IMG/VR virus record: IMGVR_UViG_3300024503_000485
Span: 62,001-126,000 of that record
Length of the DNA stretch: 64,000 nt
Strand: one strand, 5' to 3'
The notes beneath the pieces are model-generated. The model was not told the origin of the DNA. It made no database searches and worked only from the letters and a program-made list of their open reading frames with translations. Position numbers and translations under genes: made by a program. Positions 6,259 to 45,900 of the stretch are shown here, in pieces. Every line of letters begins with the position of its first letter. The first letter of the stretch is position 1.

Positions 6259-6843
6259 TTATCCTTTGACTGGGTTAGGGTTATCAACTTTACTCATAGG
6301 TGAGCTTGCACCCGCCTTGTCTTGTTTAAATTTAGGTAATTTGTATTCGACCTGTGTGCCGTTTTCTTTCTTTCTAGTCTTTGATGTTTTTTCTAGATCT
6401 TTTAAAAATCCTTTATTAAAATCATCACCGAAATAATCTTTAACCTTAATCTTGTCGTTTGACAATACTGGTTCTTCTAAAACAGCTTTACCACTTGGCT
6501 CAGAGTCAACAAATACTATGTCTGCTTCGTGAGAATCACCGCCGTTTCTAATACGGAAATGGCTCTCCGGTACAAAGTACTTGACATGTTCTGCAATTTC
6601 TGGTGCAGTAATAGGATATTCACAAACAACTTCAAATGTATGAACTTCCACATTACTTAATTCTGGAAAATCAATGGGTGATGCTTGTATAGGAGTTTTT
6701 GATTTTTCTACAATAGTAGGATTTGTTGCTCCCAAGCATTCTTTGAAATTTTTCTCAAAATTTTCAGGCAGTTCGCCAGCTACCCTTACTTTAAAAGGGT
6801 ACGATTTTTTGCTTTCAGCAAGGTATTCTCTAAAAGTCTTCAT
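6259..6843 (-). CDS. Hypothetical protein with capsid-targeting-like N-terminus
   Basis: N-terminus MKTFREYLAE resembles T4 internal protein CTS MKTYQEFIAE. Confidence 0.6.
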   Translation of the reverse strand: MKTFREYLAESKKSYPFKVRVAGELPENFEKNFKECLGATNPTIVEKSKTPIQASPIDFPELSNVEVHTFEVVCEYPITAPEIAEHVKYFVPESHFRIRNGGDSHEADIVFVDSEPSGKAVLEEPVLSNDKIKVKDYFGDDFNKGFLKDLEKTSKTRKKENGTQVEYKLPKFKQDKAGASSPMSKVDNPNPVKG

Positions 6844-6851
6844 AACTATAT

Positions 6852-7334
6852 TTATTCCTTTTGACCCAATTTCTTAAGAAGATCGTTGCGGTCTGTAATG
6901 ATGTAGCCCTGGCCTTGTAACACATCGTTTGGATCTTCGTTATTATCTTTATCAATCTTATACTTCTTAAGTTGAAGATCAATTGCTTTTAATTTTTTAT
7001 CAATTTTAGCAGTTTTAGCGTTAATAGCATTGCCCATCATGCTTGCTGCTACTTCAAAAATACGGCCGCTGTATCGTACTTCTACATTCATGCCCAAATC
7101 CATTAAATCGTCGTAGGCATCTTCTGCTTTCTTTGCTAGATTGTCAAGTTCTTTATCGTCTAATTCTTCTAACTCTTTGATAACAGGTAACCCTTTGGTT
7201 ATTTCTGCTACTGCTTTATAGCTATCTTCAAGAGAATTAACTTGTTCGTGCGAAACAACAGGAGCAGATTCTTCTGTTTTTTTCTCTGGTTCGGCAGAGT
7301 CTAAATTAAAAAGTTCTTCAAGTTTTTTGGTCAT
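6852..7334 (-). CDS. gp16: Terminase small subunit (T4 gp16-like)
   Basis: 160 aa helical protein with gp16-like RIFEVAASMM..AINAK segment and C-terminal RNDLLKKL; near TerL. Confidence 0.65.
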   Translation of the reverse strand: MTKKLEELFNLDSAEPEKKTEESAPVVSHEQVNSLEDSYKAVAEITKGLPVIKELEELDDKELDNLAKKAEDAYDDLMDLGMNVEVRYSGRIFEVAASMMGNAINAKTAKIDKKLKAIDLQLKKYKIDKDNNEDPNDVLQGQGYIITDRNDLLKKLGQKE

Positions 7335-8150: not shown

Positions 8151-9241
8151 TATACTATGTTATCCCCGCCGGCCATTATTTTAGGGCTTGCTATTGTGGT
8201 ATCTGTATTGTTTGAATTCTTTGGAAATGTTGCTCCAACAATACCGCCAACGGTATTGATTGCTCCACGAATTGTTGCAGGACTACTTAAAATATTAATT
8301 GCTTCTTGTTTAAGTCCGTCTTTACTTAAACCTTTGATATTTTTAACGGTATTTGCAGCAGCAATGGCAGTTCCTAAGAAGCCGCCGATACTACCAAATG
8401 CAGTACCATCACCTACAGCACCAAACACTGATTCAAGACCGTCTAGAACACCTCCAGGTCCTGTTAATGTTGCAACACCTCCACCGGCAACACTTAATGG
8501 ACTTGGTGTGGTATCGTAGTGTAATGTAGCGAATCCCTTAGGACTTCCAATGGCTACTTGTCCTGAACTATATCTAACAGATTCATATTGAAAACTCATT
8601 GTGTTTTCTAATGCCTCACTGCTTGCCGAGTAATCAACATTACCGTGACTCCAGGATGTTATTTTTGGATTAATATATGTGTATCCGTTAAATCTTCTAC
8701 GACTCATAGTATACACAGAAATACTTTTAATAAAATCTGGGCCTCTGTTATTGTCAAATCCGTATTGGAAGTTGTCTAATCCTGTCTCAGTCTGTCTATA
8801 GTTTGTTTTAGAAAATGCCTGATCAGGAAGATTTCGATCAGCAATATAATATCCCATATACAATGCCCATAGTGCATTGATAATTCCTGCGCTGTCATCG
8901 TAGAATGTTAGATTAACAGGATCGTAAGTATAGTTTTTGTAAATTATTTTTTTACGATTATATTGATTTTTAGTAACAGATTCGATTGTGTACTTAGGCA
9001 AGTCGGTAGATTTTACTAAGAATCCAATTTCGTCGGCATGTCTATTTGTAAATTGAGGTGCTTTAATTGCAGTCTTATCTAATTCAAATCGAACATAAAA
9101 TAAGAACTTGGTTCTCGGAGCCAACCTCATTGTATCGTCTATATACAGACGAGTTGCGTGTTGCCAATTCCCCCAAACACCTTTTGGATTTGTTAGACCT
9201 TGACCGACACCTGTAAGGAAACGAGTAAATTTATTTGCCAT
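8150..9241 (-). CDS. Tail tube initiator/tube-fold baseplate protein (gp54/gp48-like)
   Basis: Tube-fold motifs VKSTDLPKY..E...NQYNRK..Y..YDPVNLTFYDD and TMSFQYE; adjacent to tube gene. Confidence 0.65.
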   Translation of the reverse strand: MANKFTRFLTGVGQGLTNPKGVWGNWQHATRLYIDDTMRLAPRTKFLFYVRFELDKTAIKAPQFTNRHADEIGFLVKSTDLPKYTIESVTKNQYNRKKIIYKNYTYDPVNLTFYDDSAGIINALWALYMGYYIADRNLPDQAFSKTNYRQTETGLDNFQYGFDNNRGPDFIKSISVYTMSRRRFNGYTYINPKITSWSHGNVDYSASSEALENTMSFQYESVRYSSGQVAIGSPKGFATLHYDTTPSPLSVAGGGVATLTGPGGVLDGLESVFGAVGDGTAFGSIGGFLGTAIAAANTVKNIKGLSKDGLKQEAINILSSPATIRGAINTVGGIVGATFPKNSNNTDTTIASPKIMAGGDNIV

Positions 9242-9258
9242 ACAAATATTTATGCCAC

Positions 9259-9948: not shown

Positions 9949-12900
9949 TTAAATCTCTCCTGTGTTCTTAACACGCAATGGAATGTAAATGAACTCAACT
10001 GCTTTCACTGGTTCAATTGCGATATCAACATAAAGTTCGTTACGATCGATTCTTGATGGTGTGTTATTACTTTCATCACAAACCACCGCAAAGTCGTATA
10101 GTGCTCTTAAGCCTACTAATTCAAGCAATAAACTTTCTACTGCGCCTTTAATTTCGTCTCTAGTGATTTTATCATTAGGTTCAAAAATGTATGGACGAGC
10201 TAGTTTGTTTAATTGGCTTCTCAGGTATACAACTAAACGTGCTACGTTAATTCTATCTAGTGCAGAAGCATTCTTTGCTCTTGTTTTTTGACCAAATGCT
10301 ACGTGTCCTACGCCAACAAAGAATGGAATTGGATTAATCTTTAGGTCATAAAGAACATCTCTCATACCTTCGTTTAGGAATACGGTTTGGAATTCTCCTG
10401 ATACAGAATCAATGTAACCAACTGATGTTGCATTAGTAATACCGCCACGTCTTGTACCTGCTGGTGCAAACCATGGATAAGAAACTTGATCGCTTAGTGC
10501 AATTGTCTTAAGCATCATGTGTGTTGCAGGAACAACTGCATTAACACCACTTAAGTCTGTTGTAAATCCATTTGGATACCACATTGCAGAATATTCATCA
10601 TAAGTTACAACACCTGCATCACCGTTGTCGGTTACTGCGTTTGCGTTTGTACCCCAATTAATAAGTTCTGTTGCGTTGCTCTTTAAGCGGAATGGAGTAT
10701 CTGCAAGAACAAATGCTGTCATGCCACGATCAATGTTTAGGTTAACTAGGTTGCTGTACACTTCTGAATATCCAGGTGCAGCAATTAAGTTAAAGTTTCT
10801 GCGCTCTTCATCGCGGATTTCTGAACTTGTATCAATTACACTCTTAAGTGCTTGAACAACAACTTTACGTTGTGCCTTGCGACCAAATGTACCAGAACCG
10901 TCTTCGTTATTACCAGATGCTGTTGTCCAACGATCTGTTACGTATAGTTCCATGCTTACATTGCCCATGCGTCCGTTGTCTGCTGTGACATCGATGTAAC
11001 TATTTCTATATTGTTTTACGTTACCGCCAGAACGACGTAGGTTCCATAGCAACATGCCTTTTGGATATAGTGCTGGATCTGGAGCGTCAAAGTCTAAGAA
11101 GTCACTGCTTAATAAATCAACAATTGTTGATGCTGCAAGAGTTGGACTTACAGATGTGTCGCCGCCGCTAGTTGCCCAACGTGCATCAGCAAATACAATT
11201 CCTTCTTCTGAAACTTGATCAGTCTTGTCAACTAAAACCCACTTATCGGTAATACCGCCTTGAATGTCATCATTAAAGCGATAAATTGTTGGGAAGTTTT
11301 CCATATCAGCTGTGCTGATCCACAAATCGTTAGTTACAAGAGATGTTACACCGTCTTGTTGTGTTGTTGGCATACTTGCACCTACATACGGACCTGCTGG
11401 ATCTGTTGAAGCAAATACGTTTTTGTAACCTTTCCATGTAGAACCATTGTGAACCATGATGTCAACATCGCTATAAACGTTGTTAAACCATAATTGGCCG
11501 TCTTCTGCTTCATTTAATGGAGCATCGCCACTTGCTGTAAATCCAGCAGTTGCTAGTGGTTGCCAGTAAGTTGCTAGATAACCGTCAGCTGCGCCAGGTG
11601 CTGCTGAGCTTAAATCTAACACATAAGCAGATGCACTGAATAATGTTGCAAATGCTGTGCTTGATGTATCTTTAAATCTAATTTCGCCGCCAGCTTTGTG
11701 TTTGATTACTAACTGGTTGTCTGCTGAAACACTTGCTTCAACATTGTTTGTAATTTCAACTAAGCCAGTTGAGTCATAAAATGTTAATGCGTTAATTGCT
11801 GCTGCAATTGTTTCTGCATCAGTGCTGTCGCCTGCTGCTGTAAATGTAACGGTAGCTGCTGTACTTAGAGCTGCATCACCTACAACAGATTGTTTAATTG
11901 TAAATGTCTTAGCACCACTTAGTGTTCCATTAGTAATTACTTTAGAAGTAATTGTTGTTGCACCTTTAACAGCACGTCTCCAAATTTTAAATTTAGAAGT
12001 TTCTAATGTAGTGTCAGTTGACGGAGTACCGTTTGGTGTTGAATAACTAAATTCTTCGTCGCTGTTAAATTGAACAAATAAAGAATCTTTGTCAATTGCT
12101 AAACCGCCATTTGAGCGATCTAAATAATAATCTGCGGAATGTGTTGTTCCATAGATTGGAGCAGAAATTGCTGTCCATGCTTGTGTAGCTGAACTATATT
12201 TCTTAACTCTCCAACGAGCACCATTTCCTGGCTCTGTAGTTTTAATCCATACAGAACCTGTTGGATATCCTTGTTTTGTTGAAGGATTATCTGTTCTCTT
12301 AAATGTTGGAACAGAAGTGTGTGGAGCGTGAACTAGTTTTGGTTGTAGGTATGTACCTGTTGCAATTCCTAGATCAGTTAGAACGGTTCCCGAACCTGTT
12401 GCAATTACAATAGCACCACTTAGTGTTGAATCGCCTGCTGTATCTGTAGAACCATCTGAGTATAGATATAATCTGCTGTTTGCTACTTTAGCACTCACAC
12501 CAGTAATGCCTAAGCCGTTAATATAACTTGCTGTTGCTGATAATCTTGCACTTACGCTGCCGCCTGATTGAACTGCAACTGATGTTCCATTGATTAAGAA
12601 TGTATCTGCTGCTGTTAACGCTGTCACGGCGCCACCGCTAACGGTTGGCCAACTTGCTGCCCAGTCATTGCTGCCTACTAAAACCCAGCTACCGGCTGTT
12701 ACACCAGCACCGCTGTTTCCAGGAGTCTTAAAGTATACTGCTGCTGGACCTGTTGATACTGCAACTACGGCATAATCTCCAATAGAACCAACTGATGCTA
12801 AAGGAACATCTGAACCGTCTAATTTTGATGTATCGTCATCGGATAAAACAATTGGAGTTTTTGCGGCAAACTTTTGTCCACCGTTTGGAACGGTTGCGCT

Positions 12901-13350
12901 GTTCCATTCTTGAATACCCCATGTTGTATTTTGTGTGTCTAGCCACCATGCGCCGTCTGTTGGATTTGCTCCCGGGGCGTCTGCTGTTGCTTCTAGTTGA
13001 TCAAGATCTATGTCTGCTCTTACAATGAAAGCTGCGTTCGATGCGCTTAGATAGCTATATGCTGCTAGTAGACCGTATTCGTTACGCTCTCCGCCATGGA
13101 TTGGTGATCCACTGGCTGTCTTTTCAAAGAACGGAACACCAAATGTATCTACCAAATCTTTCTGGCTTGTCATCTTATAAGCCTTACCAGCATTTGCTTT
13201 TAATGTTCCAGCAGCGGTGCCTGTGCCTGCTGCATTTGTTTTATTCTGTCCTGTGGCCACAACGATAAGCGGAGTTGTACCTGGTTCTGCAGGTGTGTAA
13301 AAACTCTCGTCAATTACCGTTACTTGTACGCCTGGTGATGTTAGTGCCAT
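9949..13350 (-). CDS. gp18: Contractile tail sheath protein (gp18-like), enlarged (1133 aa)
   Basis: SPGVQVTVIDES N-terminus; PWFAPAGTRRG, LYDLKINPI, GQKT, DRINVARL, FEPND, CDESNNTP...VEFIYIP C-terminus. Confidence 0.95.
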   Translation of the reverse strand: MALTSPGVQVTVIDESFYTPAEPGTTPLIVVATGQNKTNAAGTGTAAGTLKANAGKAYKMTSQKDLVDTFGVPFFEKTASGSPIHGGERNEYGLLAAYSYLSASNAAFIVRADIDLDQLEATADAPGANPTDGAWWLDTQNTTWGIQEWNSATVPNGGQKFAAKTPIVLSDDDTSKLDGSDVPLASVGSIGDYAVVAVSTGPAAVYFKTPGNSGAGVTAGSWVLVGSNDWAASWPTVSGGAVTALTAADTFLINGTSVAVQSGGSVSARLSATASYINGLGITGVSAKVANSRLYLYSDGSTDTAGDSTLSGAIVIATGSGTVLTDLGIATGTYLQPKLVHAPHTSVPTFKRTDNPSTKQGYPTGSVWIKTTEPGNGARWRVKKYSSATQAWTAISAPIYGTTHSADYYLDRSNGGLAIDKDSLFVQFNSDEEFSYSTPNGTPSTDTTLETSKFKIWRRAVKGATTITSKVITNGTLSGAKTFTIKQSVVGDAALSTAATVTFTAAGDSTDAETIAAAINALTFYDSTGLVEITNNVEASVSADNQLVIKHKAGGEIRFKDTSSTAFATLFSASAYVLDLSSAAPGAADGYLATYWQPLATAGFTASGDAPLNEAEDGQLWFNNVYSDVDIMVHNGSTWKGYKNVFASTDPAGPYVGASMPTTQQDGVTSLVTNDLWISTADMENFPTIYRFNDDIQGGITDKWVLVDKTDQVSEEGIVFADARWATSGGDTSVSPTLAASTIVDLLSSDFLDFDAPDPALYPKGMLLWNLRRSGGNVKQYRNSYIDVTADNGRMGNVSMELYVTDRWTTASGNNEDGSGTFGRKAQRKVVVQALKSVIDTSSEIRDEERRNFNLIAAPGYSEVYSNLVNLNIDRGMTAFVLADTPFRLKSNATELINWGTNANAVTDNGDAGVVTYDEYSAMWYPNGFTTDLSGVNAVVPATHMMLKTIALSDQVSYPWFAPAGTRRGGITNATSVGYIDSVSGEFQTVFLNEGMRDVLYDLKINPIPFFVGVGHVAFGQKTRAKNASALDRINVARLVVYLRSQLNKLARPYIFEPNDKITRDEIKGAVESLLLELVGLRALYDFAVVCDESNNTPSRIDRNELYVDIAIEPVKAVEFIYIPLRVKNTGEI

Positions 13351-13456: not shown

Positions 13457-13795
13457 ATGAGACCACTTTGTAAGGCCTGTAATGAACGGCCTAGAGCATT
13501 AAATTATTATAAAGGTAAAAAACCTTATTATAGAACGCTCTGCGAAGCGTGTCTAGCTCACGGGTCTAAAGCACATATACCTCGTTGGAAACGTGCTGGA
13601 TACAAAATGAAATCGCAATGCGAAAAATGCGGATTTAAAAGTCCGCATTCTGAAGTATTTAGAGTATTTCACGTAGACGGCAATTTAGATAACTGCCGTC
13701 CTAGTAATCTAAAAACAATATGTTGTAATTGTTCTCAAGTTTTAAGCAAAGAGGGCATTACTTGGCGTCAAGGAGATTTGGTCTCTGACTACTAA
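13457..13795 (+). CDS. Zn-finger HNH-like protein (HNH motif degenerate)
   Basis: Four CxxC pairs; FHVDGNLDNCRPSNLKTICCNC; TAAATA 5 nt before ATG. Confidence 0.7.
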   Translation: MRPLCKACNERPRALNYYKGKKPYYRTLCEACLAHGSKAHIPRWKRAGYKMKSQCEKCGFKSPHSEVFRVFHVDGNLDNCRPSNLKTICCNCSQVLSKEGITWRQGDLVSDY

Positions 13796-14395
13796 TTCTG
13801 TCTGCTTAAATAGATCATCGATAGTTCCGTTATTATCTATAAAATGATCAAATTCTGTTCCTACCCATGCAGTTTCACTAGCATGAATTTTACGCATTTT
13901 TAATTCTTGGAACGCCCAGTTATGTCCTTGATTAGCGGCTAACGCTATATCATACCATTCGGGAAGTTCTCCTCTGCGTACCCATACAATTTTACCACCC
14001 GCATTTCTAATACTGCTAATTTCGTTGGGGAAACGACAATCTGAAATTACTACATTATCCTTAGAATTACGAAGTTTATTTTCTAATGATGCTATCCAAA
14101 TATCATCATGGAAGCCTTTGCGGCATACCTCTGTGCCCCAATATTGAAGTACCCACCTTGGAGTAAGTGTAGGCATTGCAAGTCTTTCTGCCCACCAAGG
14201 ATCAACTTGTTCGCGCCACTCTCTTGCTTCTTTGGTTCGACCTTCTAACATAGTTCGATCCCAACCAAACACAGAGCTTACTGCGTCTTTTAATGTATTA
14301 GCAAAAGACTCTCGTCTAAATTCGTGGAAATTAACTAGATAATCGGCAATAGTATCTTTGCCCGATCCAATAAACCCGCATACACCTATAATCAT
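13742..14395 (-). CDS. gp1: Deoxynucleoside monophosphate kinase (T4 gp1-like)
   Basis: GFIGSGKDT P-loop, SFANTLKD, TPRWVLQYWGTE, VVISDCRFPNE, HASE, NNGTIDDL. Confidence 0.92.
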   Translation of the reverse strand: MIIGVCGFIGSGKDTIADYLVNFHEFRRESFANTLKDAVSSVFGWDRTMLEGRTKEAREWREQVDPWWAERLAMPTLTPRWVLQYWGTEVCRKGFHDDIWIASLENKLRNSKDNVVISDCRFPNEISSIRNAGGKIVWVRRGELPEWYDIALAANQGHNWAFQELKMRKIHASETAWVGTEFDHFIDNNGTIDDLFKQTELVVRDQISLTPSNALFA

Positions 14396-14416
14396 AATAT
14401 CCTCCAGTTAAAGGAT

Positions 14417-14445
14417 ATTATACGTGAAATTTATTTGAAGGTCAA
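14417..14445 (-). promoter_or_regulatory. Sigma70 consensus-like (early) promoter of dNMP kinase
   Basis: TTGACC (14445-14440), 17 nt, TATAAT (14422-14417); GGAGG SD downstream. Confidence 0.8.
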
Positions 14446-15200
14446 CCAGTTATCCAGGTATAACCGGAGCCGCCTGGCACCAATTTCATTAGATCTTCAG
14501 TTAACTTATCAATTTCGGCTTGCCCTTCTGTTTTGAGTGCTGCTCCGTTTAATGAGCTTCCGCCGCCAGGACCGGCAATTTGAGCAAATTTTTCACGAGC
14601 TTGTCCTAGCATCATTTTGCAGTTAGCTAAAGCATAATCTTTAATCCATTGCCCAGAATAGGTATCGGTTATGATAGAGCTATCTGGTTTTGTGTTATAG
14701 ATTTGTAACATAACTGACTCATCAGTTCTTGGTCTTTGATGAATTATTAACTTTTTACTCTGCGGATGCCAAGTAAAATTAATAAATGCTCCAAACATTT
14801 TTCCTACAAGCTCTTGATATTGCGAAAAGAGTTCATAGGTTAACAAACCGCCCATATTTGTCGAGCTTAACAAATATGTATTAGTATAGGCTAAATTAAA
14901 AGGTTCAAATACCGTACCTCCGGTACCGCCTCCAGTTCTTGAACCAACGCTTCTTCTAAAAATTTGCCTAACCTGTTGTACTTCCTTAGGCAAAATATAT
15001 TCGTTAACATCGGTTTTTAGCACTAAAAAGGCATAGCTTTCTTCTACAGCATTATCTGAACGCTGACGGAAAACCGCTAGGGCACGATTAAGGGCTGTTT
15101 CGTAGTGGATTGGGTCTAACTCTACATCAACCATGCCGTCGCCTAGCATAGCTTTGCAGTAGTTATAAACCTCTTGTTTTACTTGATCAGTTGAGCTCAT
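14442..15200 (-). CDS. gp13: Neck/head-tail adaptor (T4 gp13-like)
   Basis: LGDGMVDVELD N-terminus; WIKDYALANCK.MLGQAREKF...GG.SLNG C-terminus. Confidence 0.88.
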   Translation of the reverse strand: MSSTDQVKQEVYNYCKAMLGDGMVDVELDPIHYETALNRALAVFRQRSDNAVEESYAFLVLKTDVNEYILPKEVQQVRQIFRRSVGSRTGGGTGGTVFEPFNLAYTNTYLLSSTNMGGLLTYELFSQYQELVGKMFGAFINFTWHPQSKKLIIHQRPRTDESVMLQIYNTKPDSSIITDTYSGQWIKDYALANCKMMLGQAREKFAQIAGPGGGSSLNGAALKTEGQAEIDKLTEDLMKLVPGGSGYTWITG

Positions 15201-15205
15201 GCTTG

Positions 15206-15226
15206 TATTTATCGTAGCGGTAAATA
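15206..15226. promoter_or_regulatory. Back-to-back late promoters (TAAATA on both strands) for divergent gp13 and gp14
   Basis: tattta 15206-15211 and taaata 15221-15226 in a 27-bp intergenic gap. Confidence 0.7.
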
Positions 15227-42972: not shown

Positions 42973-45900
42973 TTAAGTTCCTGATAAGAACTTAGATGCC
43001 ACTAACATAGTTCCGTCTATTCCTCGTTTAAAGTTTACTTTTGATGTAAAAATTAACTCATCCCCTGTAGTTGTGCCAAGTGCCTGTGGTCCAACTTGAA
43101 CAATACCAGCAACAAGTTGGGCTGTAACTGCGTCTGCACCACCTCCAGAAACACGTCTTTGAATATACGCTTTAATTGCTCTCTGTGTTGGTACAACATT
43201 GTTTGAATCTGCTGTAAACGTTATGTCTGTTGAAAATTCTCTAACGACAACGCCTGATCCACCAACGGTAACACCACCCAACCTCAATTCTTCTAGACCT
43301 TGTAGTTCAAAGAATTGAGCATTTAATGTAACCGTGCCCGTTGCCTGTTCAACTGAGAATAATTCACCAACTCTAAAGTTACCGTCTTGGTCAGTACTTG
43401 TGTAGAACACACGACCTCCATCGCGTTCTCTAACTTCATCTTCTGGAGCAAGAACGGTTCCGTTTGGATTTAATGTATCCGGGTAGTTAGTTGAATAGAA
43501 TCCTCCAAGACCGATATCTAAAAAGTCATGTCCAGTTAAACGAACCTGCGAATATTGCTGACGAATTTCAACCGATGTTCCGTGTTCTGGGCTTTCTTCT
43601 CTTCCTAGATCTTTAGCAATGGTTAATCTTGCGGTATAGTTTCCAATTGATCCGCTTAAGATTGTTGCTGTTAATAATTTATAAGTGTAATCGTCAATTC
43701 CAGCAATGTTTAAGTTATCGCCCGGTCCTGGAATTCTAGTCAAGTTATTAACAACTAAAGAGTCTCCAATTTGATATTGATCTTTATACCCGTCTCCTGA
43801 TACGGTTAATACGGTACTAGAAGTTTCGTAACCTGTACCTGCATTAATAATTGTAGGATTACCTAAAACTCCATTACCAATTCTAACTGCTGTAGAAACA
43901 TCTGAGCTGTTACTTGGATCTGTAATGGTCATTGCTGGTGCTGATGTGTATCCGCTACCAGGTTCCCAAATATTAATACTAGAAATTCTTCCTGCAACAA
44001 CTCTTGCTCTTGCCTGTGCTTGTACACCAGTGCTGATTAATCTACCAACATTGCTGTTAGTCGAGAATCCTGCAATTGCTAAGAATTTTCCTGGTTTCAT
44101 TGGGTTTCCAAAACATACTGCTGCCCAAGGTGCTGTTGTGCTTATCGATTGATAAGTCCAATTATAACCATCTTTTGATATTGCTATAGTATTTGTACCG
44201 GTTGCAACGGCAACAAACAGACCTTGACCATAAGTTACCTGTTGCCAGTTAGCCGCAGTTAGTGTTGATTCATACCATGTTGAACCGTTAAAACTAATTG
44301 AAACTTCGGTAGCACCTGCATAACCGCCTGATAGTGCTACCCAGCGATTGTTACCAAAGGCTAGGCTAATTGCACCTTGTGGTATGCTTGTGGCTGTCCA
44401 CGCTGTTCCATTTGTTGAATATGCAACCGCAGCACCTGCTGTTGAAGAATCACTAGCGGCTACTATAACAAATTTTCCCGAACCGTATTCGATAGCGTTC
44501 CAGTCAGCACCTTCTGGTAACGAAGATGTAGTCCATGTTGTTAGATCCAATGATGTAGCAACAATATTTTTGCTTCCAGAAATTGCTACCCATGTAGAAT
44601 TTCCATATGATACATCTCTCCAGTCTGTTGATCCCGGAATAGTCACCGATGACCAAGATGTGCCGTTAGTTGATTTTGCTACATAACCTCCTGTAGCAAA
44701 AGCTAATAATACTCCTCCAGTATATTTTATTTTTGTCCATAGTGCGGTTACTGGAAGTGTGCCGTTAGTCCAGGTTACCCCGTCGGCTGAATAAGCAGCA
44801 ACGTTGCTGTCAATAGCTACCGCTACCCAATATGTTCCATTGAATGCCAAACTACTCCATTGTCTGCTGTTTGGTAATGTAGTTGATGCTGACGTAAATC
44901 CCGGACTAGTAAATGTAATTCGTGGTTCAATTGCATAATTTGCTGTTGTGTTCAACGATGTTTGTATAGGAGTACCCTCAACAAGATGTTCCCACCCTGC
45001 TGCATGTAATAAGAATGAACCTGTAGCGTTAATTAGACCATATACTGAACCGCCTGACGATGTGCTAACTTTAATTTTGTTGTTTAATGAATCAATAGTA
45101 TGAACAAAATAAACAACATAATTAGCAATGTTTCCTATAGTTGTTCCAGAAAATACCACTGGTTGATTTACACTTAATGTTGTGGTGTCTAAAAGTGTAA
45201 TCCAGTTTCCTGATGAAGATGTTGCCGAACATGATATTGGGCTTGTAGATTCTTTAGCTACATAAACAACTTTTCCTGTTGCATCATAATCGGCAATATA
45301 TCCATATTGGCCAACACCTTGACCAGATGGAATTAAAATTCTCATTGTTTTATAAGTTGCAGCATCGTTTTCGTCTGATCCTGCAATTACAAATGTATAT
45401 GCATCAGTTGTACCTTGGCCGGCGTTGGTTGTAAACACATATCCAGAACCTCCTTCTGCAGACGAATCGCCTCTATTTGTAATTCTTACTTCGTAAACTC
45501 CACCATCTCTAATTTCATTACCTGAAACTTGTGCATTAATTCCAGAACCAACAATAGAGTATGAAGCACTAGAATAACCGTTACCGGCATGAGAATAAAA
45601 GACCTTCATTAATCCTTGGTCGTCGTTAACCATAGTCTGATACACATCTGCATCATAGTATCTATTGTTTACGGTGCAGGTAATTGGATCTTCTGTGGTA
45701 TTATATTTTTCAGATACAGCACCATAGGTTCCGTAAGAGCAGTTTCCGTTGGTTCCTCGGATCTTACCACCGTTTGTACATAGATAACCAATGTGGCAAT
45801 AATATGTAAAGATCGAAACACATTCTGTTCGGCCTTCACCGTTGGCCCATACACCAATACCGTCACTTAAAATTTGTGTGAAGTCGTTAGCAACCATTGT

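What the first reader, a model, noticed from the sequence alone, without database searches (positions are those of the whole stretch)
14394..14445. dNMP kinase RBS hidden in a 10-bp hairpin whose 5' arm is the -10 box
Seen: ATAATATCCT...AGGATATTAT perfect inverted repeat (14421-14412 / 14403-14394) covering part of the SD and the AUG; the 5' arm overlaps TATAAT of a TTGACC-N17-TATAAT promoter. Established: T4 uses promoter-dependent RBS-sequestering hairpins (e, soc, 49, I-TevI) to silence late genes on early RNA. Inference: this is the reverse logic, where late read-through from gp13 is translationally silenced and the early transcript, lacking the 5' arm, is translated. It could also be an operator palindrome.
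Basis: partly seen in the sequence, partly recalled or inferred. Interest (0 to 1): 0.6.

Follow-up and report, generated by a model that had tools for sequence, protein, structure and literature searches.

The report
Promoter-gated hairpin masking an early gene's start
In an uncultured giant phage, a conserved RNA hairpin hides the ribosome-binding site of a nucleotide kinase gene on messages that read in from the upstream late neck gene. The gene's own early-type promoter sits inside the hairpin's first arm, so its messages lack that arm: the mirror image of a classic phage T4 trick.

Summary
On the minus strand, TTGACC-N17-TATAAT (14445-14417) precedes the dNMP kinase gene (14395-13742). 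The perfect 10-bp repeat extends to a 13-bp RNA stem (14422-14410 / 14405-14393, -12.4 kcal/mol) covering the whole GGAGG and the AUG. Its 5' arm begins with the -10 box.

In 66 distinct upstream sequences from related IMG/VR contigs:
- The promoter is kept while the spacer varies freely.
- The inner stem covaries: 69 double-sided changes against 34±5 in shuffles.
- The stem is far more stable on the mRNA strand (-9.1 vs -4.6 kcal/mol; 20% G·U pairs). That argues for an RNA structure, not a DNA operator.
- One subgroup masks the SD with a different fold but the same geometry.

The upstream neck gene carries a T4-type late promoter (ATAAATA, 5 nt before its ATG, in about 80 relatives). The genome encodes a gp55-type late sigma factor. 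No terminator separates the two genes.

Best reading (about 0.7): late read-through mRNA cannot translate the kinase, and the short early transcript can. This is a new variant of a known kind (T4 e/soc/49/I-TevI; IS10 fold-back inhibition) with reversed temporal polarity. No transcript or translation data exist.

The parts
14442..15200 (-). Neck protein / head-tail adaptor Ad2 gene (252 aa), the presumed late gene whose transcript reads into the kinase gene
   Evidence: ORF; phrog_211 E = 2.9e-35; homologues annotated as neck protein in PA5oct, 121Q and CBB
15206..15212 (-). ATAAATA, a T4-type late-promoter motif 5 nt before the neck ATG, with no SD; predicts a leaderless late mRNA
   Evidence: Sequence. 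The heptamer is 21-fold enriched upstream of genes outside the early region. It sits exactly 5 nt before the neck ATG in all but one of the roughly 80 relatives examined (42 distinct upstream sequences), while the 5-nt spacer varies
14440..14445 (-). -35 hexamer TTGACC, overlapping the neck gene's TGA stop
   Evidence: TTGAC kept in 63 of 66 distinct relatives, including those where the stop codon lies elsewhere
14417..14422 (-). -10 hexamer TATAAT, which is also the first six bases of the hairpin's 5' arm
   Evidence: TATAAT in 50 and TATACT in 11 of 66 relatives; spacer of 17 nt (50) or 18 nt (16)
14408..14410 (-). Predicted transcription start of the kinase gene's own promoter (7-9 nt after the -10), at the last arm base or in the loop. 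Inferred, not mapped
   Evidence: Standard sigma-70 geometry applied; the distance from the -10 end to the ATG is 18-23 nt (mode 20) in all relatives
14410..14422 (-). 5' arm of the RNA hairpin (UAUAAUAUCCUUU)
   Evidence: perfect 10-bp core
14406..14409 (-). Loop AACU
14393..14405 (-). 3' arm (GGAGGAUAUUAUG): the whole Shine-Dalgarno GGAGG (14405-14401), the spacer and the AUG (14395-14393)
   Evidence: opening a 30S-sized footprint costs 13.1 kcal/mol in the long RNA and 4.7 in the short RNA
13742..14395 (-). dNMP kinase gene (217 aa)
   Evidence: PF21448 49.1 bits; phrog_139 E = 1.7e-50; weak match to 1DEK
14383..14392 (-). Codons 2-4 (AUUAUAGGUG), which can pair with ACGUAUAAU (14426-14417) as an alternative when the main stem is opened
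   Evidence: I6; forced-open fold
13457..13795 (+). Convergent 112-aa HNH-like ORF overlapping the kinase gene's 3' end by 54 nt; context, not part of the switch
   Evidence: phrog_2255 E = 5e-7; a gap of the same size is conserved in 27 relatives

Best explanation
This is a promoter-gated translational insulator. The dNMP kinase gene is an early-type gene lying inside a late structural operon (neck, kinase, sheath). Early in infection, host sigma-70 RNA polymerase is predicted to start at TTGACC-N17-TATAAT, about 14410-14408. The resulting mRNA has a leader of about 13-15 nt that begins in the hairpin loop. It lacks the 5' arm, so its GGAGG and AUG are free and the kinase is made. Late in infection, polymerase carrying the phage's gp55-type sigma factor starts at the ATAAATA motif of the neck gene. 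With no terminator in the way, it reads across the 46-nt junction. On that long RNA the former -10 box and the bases after it pair with the SD, the spacer and the AUG (13 bp, -12.4 kcal/mol), so ribosomes cannot initiate on the kinase cistron. The neck stop codon lies 20 nt before the stem, so a terminating ribosome should not melt it. Shown here: the anatomy, its conservation and covariation, its strand specificity, the two promoter classes, and the absence of a terminator. Inferred: the transcript ends, the timing, and the size of the translational effect.
For: Anatomy and stability.

Conservation: 66 distinct upstream sequences from IMG/VR relatives (76-100% kinase protein identity; 51 distinct over the 39-nt hairpin segment) keep TTGAC, a 17/18-nt spacer and TATAAT or TATACT. 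Information is 1.4-2 bits at the hexamer positions other than the last base of the -35, against 0.1-1.0 bits in the spacer.

Covariation:
- MAFFT alignment: 84.5% of cells paired against 78.0±0.9 in shuffles, and 64 double-sided changes against 31.8±5.2 (0 of 500 shuffles reach this). Slid controls pair at 44-61%.
- Model-based alignment of 88 hits: 86.7% paired, 69 double-sided changes against 34±4.8, and 5 of 7 inner pairs compensatory.
- Switches recur many times on the kinase-gene tree, for example 22 Fitch changes at one pair and 8 independent neighbour pairs with a double-sided switch.
- Each 5' arm folds best with its own 3' arm: -9.1 against -5.9 kcal/mol for chimeras, p = 9e-15.

Strand test: the sense strand is more stable in 50 of 51 sequences (-9.1 against -4.6 kcal/mol), and 122 of 604 pairs are G·U.

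A subgroup (L088, L118, L056, L130, L142) uses another fold. UUCUCC, lying upstream of the -10, pairs with the GGAGAA SD. This gives the same outcome by different means.

Opening a 30S footprint (-12 to +14) costs 13.9 kcal/mol in long RNAs and 3.3 in short ones across the family, and 13.1 against 4.7 in the window.

Promoter classes: 22 TTGACA-N17-TA(T/C)AAT promoters cluster at 2.6-37 kb of the genome. ATAAATA is enriched 21-fold upstream of other genes. It is fixed 5 nt before the neck ATG in about 80 relatives. A gp55-type sigma factor is present.

No terminator lies in the junction (and the sequence itself).

Where an extra gene sits between neck and kinase, the module stays with the kinase gene.

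Cultured relatives separate the same two genes by intrinsic terminators instead (121Q, Hallingskeid, Atu_ph07). Their neck genes carry the T4-polarity version of the same device.

The T4 precedent gives about 100-fold repression for gene e (PMC3014915).
Against:
- 'Early' and 'late' rest on analogy with T4 and on motif distribution.
- With a narrow footprint (-12 to +3), the window's own sequence shows only a 2.2 kcal/mol difference. The freed 5' arm can re-pair with codons 2-4.
- PA5oct couples the kinase gene directly to the neck gene (4-nt gap), and the kinase was detected by mass spectrometry of virions. Late kinase synthesis is therefore tolerated in a relative.
- Several relatives have weak stems, about -4 to -6 kcal/mol (L092 type, L128, L125).
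- The outer five pairs never vary, so they say nothing either way.
- The junction is so short that any hairpin there would overlap the promoter and the ribosome-binding site.
Confidence: 0.7

Rival explanations
1. The hairpin serves the upstream neck mRNA. It would be a 3'-end stabiliser, a processing site or a weak terminator of the late transcript, and its overlap with the kinase ribosome-binding site is a by-product of a 46-nt junction.
For: Cultured relatives have a stem-loop (an intrinsic terminator) at the same place, directly after the neck stop. The junction is very compact.
Against: There is no U-tract after the stem, and the stem is AU-rich. In every variant the 3' arm is exactly the SD, spacer and AUG. 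The subgroup with a different fold still targets the SD with an anti-SD UUCUCC. A stem of 13 bp is too short for RNase III (general knowledge). Where an extra late gene is inserted, the module stays with the kinase gene, not with the neck gene.
Confidence: 0.1
2. The hairpin forms on all kinase transcripts and simply keeps kinase translation low. In this reading the real start site is upstream, or the TTGACC/TATAAT pair is not the working promoter.
For: No start site has been mapped. Stems that damp translation at ribosome-binding sites are common.
Against: The two hexamers are conserved at 1.4-2 bits in all but the last base of the -35, while the spacer is at 0.1-1.0 bits. They match the genome's early promoter class and the TTGAC/TATAATA promoters identified around transcription start sites in PA5oct (PMC7318152). 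The -10 is always the start of the 5' arm, an arrangement that has no purpose if the promoter is unused.
Confidence: 0.12
3. The repeat is a DNA operator palindrome for a dimeric repressor sitting over the -10 and the start site.
For: The window's core is a perfect 10-bp palindrome that overlaps the -10.
Against: The sequence of the inner arms changes freely while the pairing is kept. About 20% of pairs are G·U, which would be A·C mismatches on the other strand. The antisense fold is weaker in 50 of 51 sequences.
Confidence: 0.03
4. The repeat is a chance inverted repeat in AT-rich sequence.
For: The stem is AU-rich. TATAAT is by nature complementary to AUUAUG-like start contexts.
Against: The window holds 6 such repeats against 0.8 expected, the fold has z = -3.3, and above all the structure is conserved with compensatory changes in more than 50 distinct sequences.
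Confidence: 0.01

Closest known systems
Phage T4 genes e (lysozyme), soc, 49 and I-TevI: RBS-sequestering hairpins with a late promoter in or next to the 5' arm (reviewed in PMC3014915)
   Same: The SD and/or AUG are buried in a helix. The gene's own promoter lies in the DNA that encodes the 5' arm, so its transcripts lack that arm and are translated, while read-through transcripts are silent. The device is conserved among related phages. The lineage is T4-like (gp55-type sigma factor, TATAAATA-like late promoters).
   Different: The polarity is reversed. Here the gating promoter is a sigma-70 -35/-10 (early) type and the silenced read-through RNA comes from a late gene. In T4 the gating promoter is the late TATAAATA and the silenced RNAs are early or middle ones. 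The gated gene is a nucleotide-metabolism enzyme, not a late function or a homing endonuclease.
IS10/Tn10 'fold-back inhibition' (Davis, Simons & Kleckner 1985, cited in PMC13181058), with similar arrangements in other insertion sequences
   Same: Transcripts entering from outside carry a segment upstream of the element's own start site. That segment pairs with the transposase ribosome-binding site. Transcripts from the element's own promoter lack it. The purpose is insulation from foreign read-through. This rests on my own knowledge of the 1985 paper; only the citation and the sequestered translation signals were seen in the library.
   Different: That is a mobile element, not a phage operon. 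There is no temporal programme, and no homology.
Aeromonas phage Aeh1 mobE and T4 segB hairpins (PMC3014915)
   Same: An RNA hairpin at the ribosome-binding site of a gene embedded among differently regulated genes of a T4-like phage.
   Different: Those are homing-endonuclease genes, gated by late or middle promoters.
Neck genes of cultured relatives CBB, XbC2 and Hallingskeid (found here)
   Same: Same phage group and same locus. A hairpin whose 5' arm contains the promoter motif and whose 3' arm contains the SD-like sequence, with covariation between phages (CCCC/GGGG against CCUC/GAGG).
   Different: There the promoter motif in the arm is the late type (CTAAATA) and the gated gene is the neck gene, so that is the classical T4 polarity.

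Membership tests
Promoter-gated RBS-sequestering hairpin (T4 e/soc/49/I-TevI type) | SD and/or start codon lie inside an RNA helix | tested here: met
   A 13-bp stem covers GGAGG and AUG, -12.4 kcal/mol. The same holds in nearly all of 64 distinct relatives.
Promoter-gated RBS-sequestering hairpin (T4 e/soc/49/I-TevI type) | The gene's own promoter lies in the DNA encoding the 5' arm, so its transcript lacks that arm | tested here: inconclusive
   Met at sequence level: the -10 is the first six bases of the arm, and the predicted start is at the loop in all relatives. The start site has not been mapped.
Promoter-gated RBS-sequestering hairpin (T4 e/soc/49/I-TevI type) | The gating promoter is a T4 late promoter (TATAAATA), and the silenced RNAs are early or middle ones | tested here: not met
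   The gating promoter is TTGACC-N17-TATAAT. The upstream gene carries the late-type ATAAATA. The element works like the family, but with opposite polarity.
Promoter-gated RBS-sequestering hairpin (T4 e/soc/49/I-TevI type) | Long transcripts are translated much less than short ones | not testable with these tools
   Only a thermodynamic estimate is available: opening cost of 13.1 against 4.7 kcal/mol in the window, and 13.9 against 3.3 across the family.
Conserved cis-regulatory RNA structure | Pairing is maintained by compensatory changes, more than in controls | tested here: met
   0 of 500 shuffles reach the observed value; slid controls are lower; many independent switches; own arms against chimeric arms.
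Conserved cis-regulatory RNA structure | Strand specificity (G·U pairs tolerated on the transcribed sense strand) | tested here: met
   The sense strand is more stable in 50 of 51 sequences; 122 of 604 pairs are G·U.
Intrinsic (rho-independent) terminator | A GC-rich stem followed directly by a U-tract | tested here: not met
   The stem has 3 G-C pairs out of 13 and is followed by AUUAUAGGUG. The terminator scan does not report it.
DNA operator palindrome | Conserved half-site sequence, symmetric on both strands | tested here: not met
   The inner arms vary in sequence and covary; G·U pairs break the DNA symmetry.
Known RNA families (Rfam 15) | A match at or near a family's gathering score | tested here: not met
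   Only a chance-level hit elsewhere in the region (SAM-SAH, 17.3 bits against 40, E = 0.86).
dNMP kinase (T4 gp1 family) | Pfam DNMK above its cut-off, with an N-terminal P-loop | tested here: met
   PF21448 49.1 bits against 27.1; phrog_139 E = 1.7e-50; GxxGxGKD at residues 7-14; the best PDB hit is 1DEK, weak at E = 0.005. Enzyme activity was not tested.

The most novel reading that the evidence does not exclude
The reversed gate is functional and is one half of a wider grammar in this clade of uncultured jumbo phages. In this reading, late genes such as the neck gene are transcribed as leaderless mRNAs (ATAAATA-N5-AUG, no SD), and an SD-led early gene embedded in the late operon is masked on late RNA. 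The 5' end chosen by each sigma factor, rather than termination, would then decide which cistrons of one DNA stretch are translated at each stage. Both polarities of promoter-in-arm hairpins occur in the group: the kinase gene here, and the neck genes of CBB and Hallingskeid.
Probability: 0.25. Interest if true: 0.75.

Novelty: new variant of a known kind. Interest (0 to 1): 0.55.

Why it matters
Since the 1980s, promoter-dependent unmasking of a ribosome-binding site has been known in T4 only in one direction: late genes kept silent on early RNA. This element would show that the same device is used the other way round, to keep an early enzyme gene silent while late polymerase drives through it. 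That would explain how an early gene can sit inside a late structural operon without a terminator.

The comparative signal is unusually clean for a 39-nt element: more than 50 distinct sequences, recurrent compensatory changes, and a second fold with the same logic. It could serve as a compact natural 'read-through insulator' for synthetic operons. It also gives a simple sequence rule for annotating temporal classes in uncultured jumbo phages.

Tried and rejected
1. Megablast of the locus against GenBank phages found no match. Relatives were reached only through proteins and IMG/VR.

No reads were laid, so there is no expression evidence.

3. Mean unpaired probability of the RBS proved a poor measure. 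It scored the long and short RNAs of the window alike (0.40 against 0.41). A narrow forced-open footprint (-12 to +3) gave only 2.2 kcal/mol for the window, because the freed arm re-pairs with codons 2-4. A 30S-sized footprint was used instead.

4. I asked whether the device is general in this genome. A scan of 263 called starts found no other clean case. Two early-region candidates (genome 25313 and 28990) are not conserved in relatives at 67-81% (28990) and 38% (25313) protein identity, so they have no support.

5. The covariance model R1 found exactly one site in the window and one per related locus. It found none in PA5oct, Hallingskeid or 121Q, the three cultured relatives included in the search.

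6. Rfam gave nothing.

7. The operator-palindrome, terminator and chance readings were considered and rejected, as set out under the rival explanations.

8. Translational coupling to the neck gene was considered. The stop codon lies 20 nt before the stem, too far for a terminating ribosome to open it (inference). PA5oct, by contrast, is coupled through a 4-nt gap.

Full report
**What is there.** The window is bases 62001-126000 of a 219-kb IMG/VR virus record, estimated 62% complete. By protein similarity it is a jumbo myovirus of the group that holds PA5oct, 121Q/Rak2-like phages, CBB and Atu_ph07. It has no close DNA relative among GenBank phages.

On the minus strand the gene order is:
- neck protein / head-tail adaptor Ad2 (15200-14442);
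- a 46-nt junction;
- dNMP kinase (14395-13742);
- a convergent 112-aa HNH-like ORF on the plus strand;
- tail sheath (13350-9949).

The junction reads TTGACC (14445-14440, overlapping the neck TGA stop), 17 nt, TATAAT (14422-14417), then ATCCTTTAACTGGAGGATATTATG.

As RNA it extends to 13 bp with three G·U pairs (14422-14410 with 14405-14393, loop AACU), at -12.4 kcal/mol and z = -3.3. The 3' arm is exactly the SD GGAGG, the 5-nt spacer and the AUG. The 5' arm begins with the -10 hexamer. Perfect repeats of this size are rare in the window (6 against 0.8 expected), and at least three of the other five look like terminators.

**Comparative evidence.** Two IMG/VR scans returned 80 loci each. From these I took 66 distinct sequences of the 110 nt upstream of the kinase start.
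- The promoter is kept. The -35 is TTGAC in 63 of 66. The spacer is 17 nt (50) or 18 nt (16). The -10 is TATAAT (50) or TATACT (11). The distance from the -10 end to the ATG is 18-23 nt.
- Information content is 1.4-2 bits at the hexamer positions other than the last base of the -35, and 0.1-1.0 bits in the spacer.
- Nearly every sequence folds into a hairpin in the same place, but with different inner arms: ATCC/GGAT, ATTC/GAAT, GTC/GAC, TGTC/GACA, AGTC/GACT.
- On a MAFFT alignment of 51 distinct 39-mers, 84.5% of cells pair against 78.0±0.9 in shuffles. There are 64 cells changed on both sides against 31.8±5.2. None of 500 shuffles reaches this, and all slid controls pair at 44-61%.
- A covariance model found one hit per locus (88 hits). 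Its alignment gives 86.7% paired, 69 double-sided cells against 34±4.8, and compensatory changes at 5 of the 7 inner pairs.
- The outer five pairs (UAUAA with UUAUG) never vary and are uninformative.
- On a tree of the kinase genes the pair states switch many times. One pair shows 22 Fitch changes, and 8 independent neighbouring leaf pairs show a double-sided switch. The signal is therefore not one inherited event.
- Without any alignment, each 5' half folds better with its own 3' half than with those of other sequences: -9.1 against -5.9 kcal/mol, p = 9e-15.

**RNA or DNA?** The fold is stronger on the mRNA strand than on the complementary strand in 50 of 51 sequences (mean -9.1 against -4.6 kcal/mol). 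In addition, 122 of 604 predicted pairs are G·U. A protein-binding DNA palindrome would be strand-symmetric and conserved in sequence. This element is neither, so the operator reading is very unlikely.

**A second solution with the same logic.** Five relatives (L088, L118, L056, L130, L142) lack the standard stem. In them UUCUCC, lying upstream of a TATACT -10 box, pairs with the SD GGAGAA around a small nested hairpin. Again the masking segment lies upstream of the predicted start. This points to masking of the SD on read-through RNA as the selected property, rather than one particular helix.

**Which transcripts carry the arm.**
- The genome has two promoter classes. Twenty-two TTGACA-N17-TA(T/C)AAT sites lie on one strand at 2.6-37 kb, in front of small ORFs. 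The rest of the genome has about ten, one of them at the kinase gene. Shuffles give about 11 per genome.
- PA5oct promoters identified around transcription start sites have the same TTGAC and TATAATA motifs (PMC7318152).
- The heptamer ATAAATA is 21-fold enriched upstream of other genes.
- A gp55-type late sigma factor is encoded next to a gp47-like gene (phrog_12791, E = 1.8e-82).
- The neck gene has ATAAATA exactly 5 nt before its ATG, with no SD, in all but one of the roughly 80 relatives examined (42 distinct upstream sequences), while the 5 nt vary freely.
- The junction has no terminator: no U-tract, and only 3 G-C pairs in the stem.

Late transcripts from the neck promoter should therefore read into the kinase gene with the full hairpin. 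Transcripts from the kinase gene's own promoter should begin at about 14410-14408 and lack the 5' arm. This follows from standard sigma-70 geometry and has not been mapped.

**Size of the effect.** Forcing a 30S-sized footprint (-12 to +14) open costs 13.1 kcal/mol in a 100-nt read-through RNA of the window and 4.7 in the short RNA. The family means are 13.9 and 3.3. With a narrow footprint the window's difference shrinks to 2.2 kcal/mol, because the freed arm re-pairs with codons 2-4. That alternative would itself be covered by a bound ribosome. A difference of 8-10 kcal/mol is of the order that gave about 100-fold repression at T4 gene e (PMC3014915). This comparison is an inference.

**Context in relatives.**
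- The order neck, (0-6 small genes), kinase, sheath is kept across the whole group.
- Where an extra gene is inserted after the neck gene and coupled to it by TAATG, the promoter-hairpin module stays directly in front of the kinase gene.
- Cultured relatives solve the boundary in other ways. 121Q, Hallingskeid and Atu_ph07 have an intrinsic terminator right after the neck stop. 121Q then has a TATAAT-containing stretch before its next gene.
- PA5oct joins the two genes with a 4-nt gap, and its kinase was detected by virion mass spectrometry. Insulation is therefore common but not universal, and late kinase synthesis is not lethal in itself.
- The neck genes of CBB/XbC2 and of Hallingskeid carry the classical T4-polarity device. 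A 13-bp or 10-bp stem has a 5' arm that holds the late-type CTAAATA and a 3' arm that holds the SD-like AGGGG or AGAGG, with covariation between the phages. The lineage evidently uses promoter-in-arm hairpins.

**Comparison with what is known.** The architecture is that of T4 e, soc, 49 and I-TevI (PMC3014915) and, in purpose, of IS10 fold-back inhibition (Davis et al. 1985, cited in PMC13181058). It fails one defining feature of the T4 set: the gating promoter is early-type and the silenced RNA is late. I therefore file it as a new variant of a known kind, not as a member. Searches of the held literature found no description of the reversed polarity in a phage. That shows only that the library holds no such report. 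Rfam has no matching family.

**Limits.** The phage is uncultured and its host is unknown. No RNA data could be obtained. Timing classes rest on analogy with T4. The hairpin is weak in some relatives. Two further candidates in the same genome did not survive a conservation test, so this is a single conserved locus, not a genome-wide habit.

**Verdict.**
- Confidence that the hairpin is a selected RNA structure is about 0.9.
- Confidence that it silences the kinase cistron on late read-through RNA while the gene's own transcript is translated is about 0.7.

Noticed in passing
window 15198-15212 (-), 9239-9253 (-), 6841-6855 (-); genome-wide list: Late-type ATAAATA motifs often end only 4-7 nt before the ATG of structural genes that have no SD. 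At the neck gene the spacing is exactly 5 nt in all but one of the roughly 80 relatives examined, while the spacer varies. With T4 geometry this predicts leaderless late mRNAs. Cultured relatives (PA5oct, CBB, Hallingskeid, Atu_ph07, Phosso) instead have the motif 24-33 nt before the neck ATG (read from the sequences), i.e. leaders of roughly 20-30 nt.
   Followed up: partly
genome G000:C1 2.6-37 kb (outside the window): A putative early region: 22 near-consensus TTGACA-N17-TA(T/C)AAT promoters, all on one strand, each 6-50 nt before a small ORF.
   Followed up: partly
L159:32-66 and L159:863-895 (CBB); L161:34-68 (XbC2); L155:607-646 (Hallingskeid): The neck genes of cultured relatives have hairpins whose 5' arm holds the late-type CTAAATA and whose 3' arm holds the SD-like AGGGG or AGAGG (-18.1 and -14.3 kcal/mol). 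CCCC/GGGG against CCUC/GAGG covary. This is the classical T4 polarity in cultivable phages. CBB_202 also has TATAAATA followed by a 14-bp stem.
   Followed up: partly
L088, L118, L056, L130, L142 (about 45 nt before the kinase ATG): A subgroup replaces the standard stem by an anti-SD UUCUCC, upstream of a TATACT -10 box, that pairs with GGAGAA around a nested CUGUAUA/UAUACAG hairpin.
   Followed up: partly
L109:2680-3000: The standard promoter, the hairpin and the first 8 kinase codons are cut off by an insertion of about 240 nt that carries a 78-aa antisense ORF. A second TTGACA-N17-TATAAT and a new start (MAIIGVVGF) drive the rest of the kinase gene, without a hairpin.
   Followed up: no
window 13457-13795 (+): A 112-aa HNH-like ORF (phrog_2255, E = 5e-7) converges on the kinase gene and overlaps it by 54 nt. 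It is preceded by GTAAATA-N5-ATG. The 350-400-nt gap that holds it is conserved in all 27 relatives checked, so it is a resident gene, not a recent insertion. A sigma-70-like TAGACA-N17-TATAAT lies antisense inside it at 13555-13527.
   Followed up: partly
L154:1496-1501 (PA5oct): In PA5oct the neck and kinase genes are separated by only 4 nt, and the kinase is flagged 'ESI-MS/MS', meaning it was detected in virion preparations. This is unexpected for a nucleotide kinase.
   Followed up: no
window 9949-13350 (-): The tail sheath protein is unusually long, 1133 aa. Its C-terminal sheath domain occupies 1029-1127, and phrog_10581 matches its full length.
   Followed up: no
window 44674-44701: Another perfect 10-bp inverted repeat with an 8-nt loop. 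On the minus strand the loop reads GGAGGTTA followed by TG. It is not at a called gene start.
   Followed up: no
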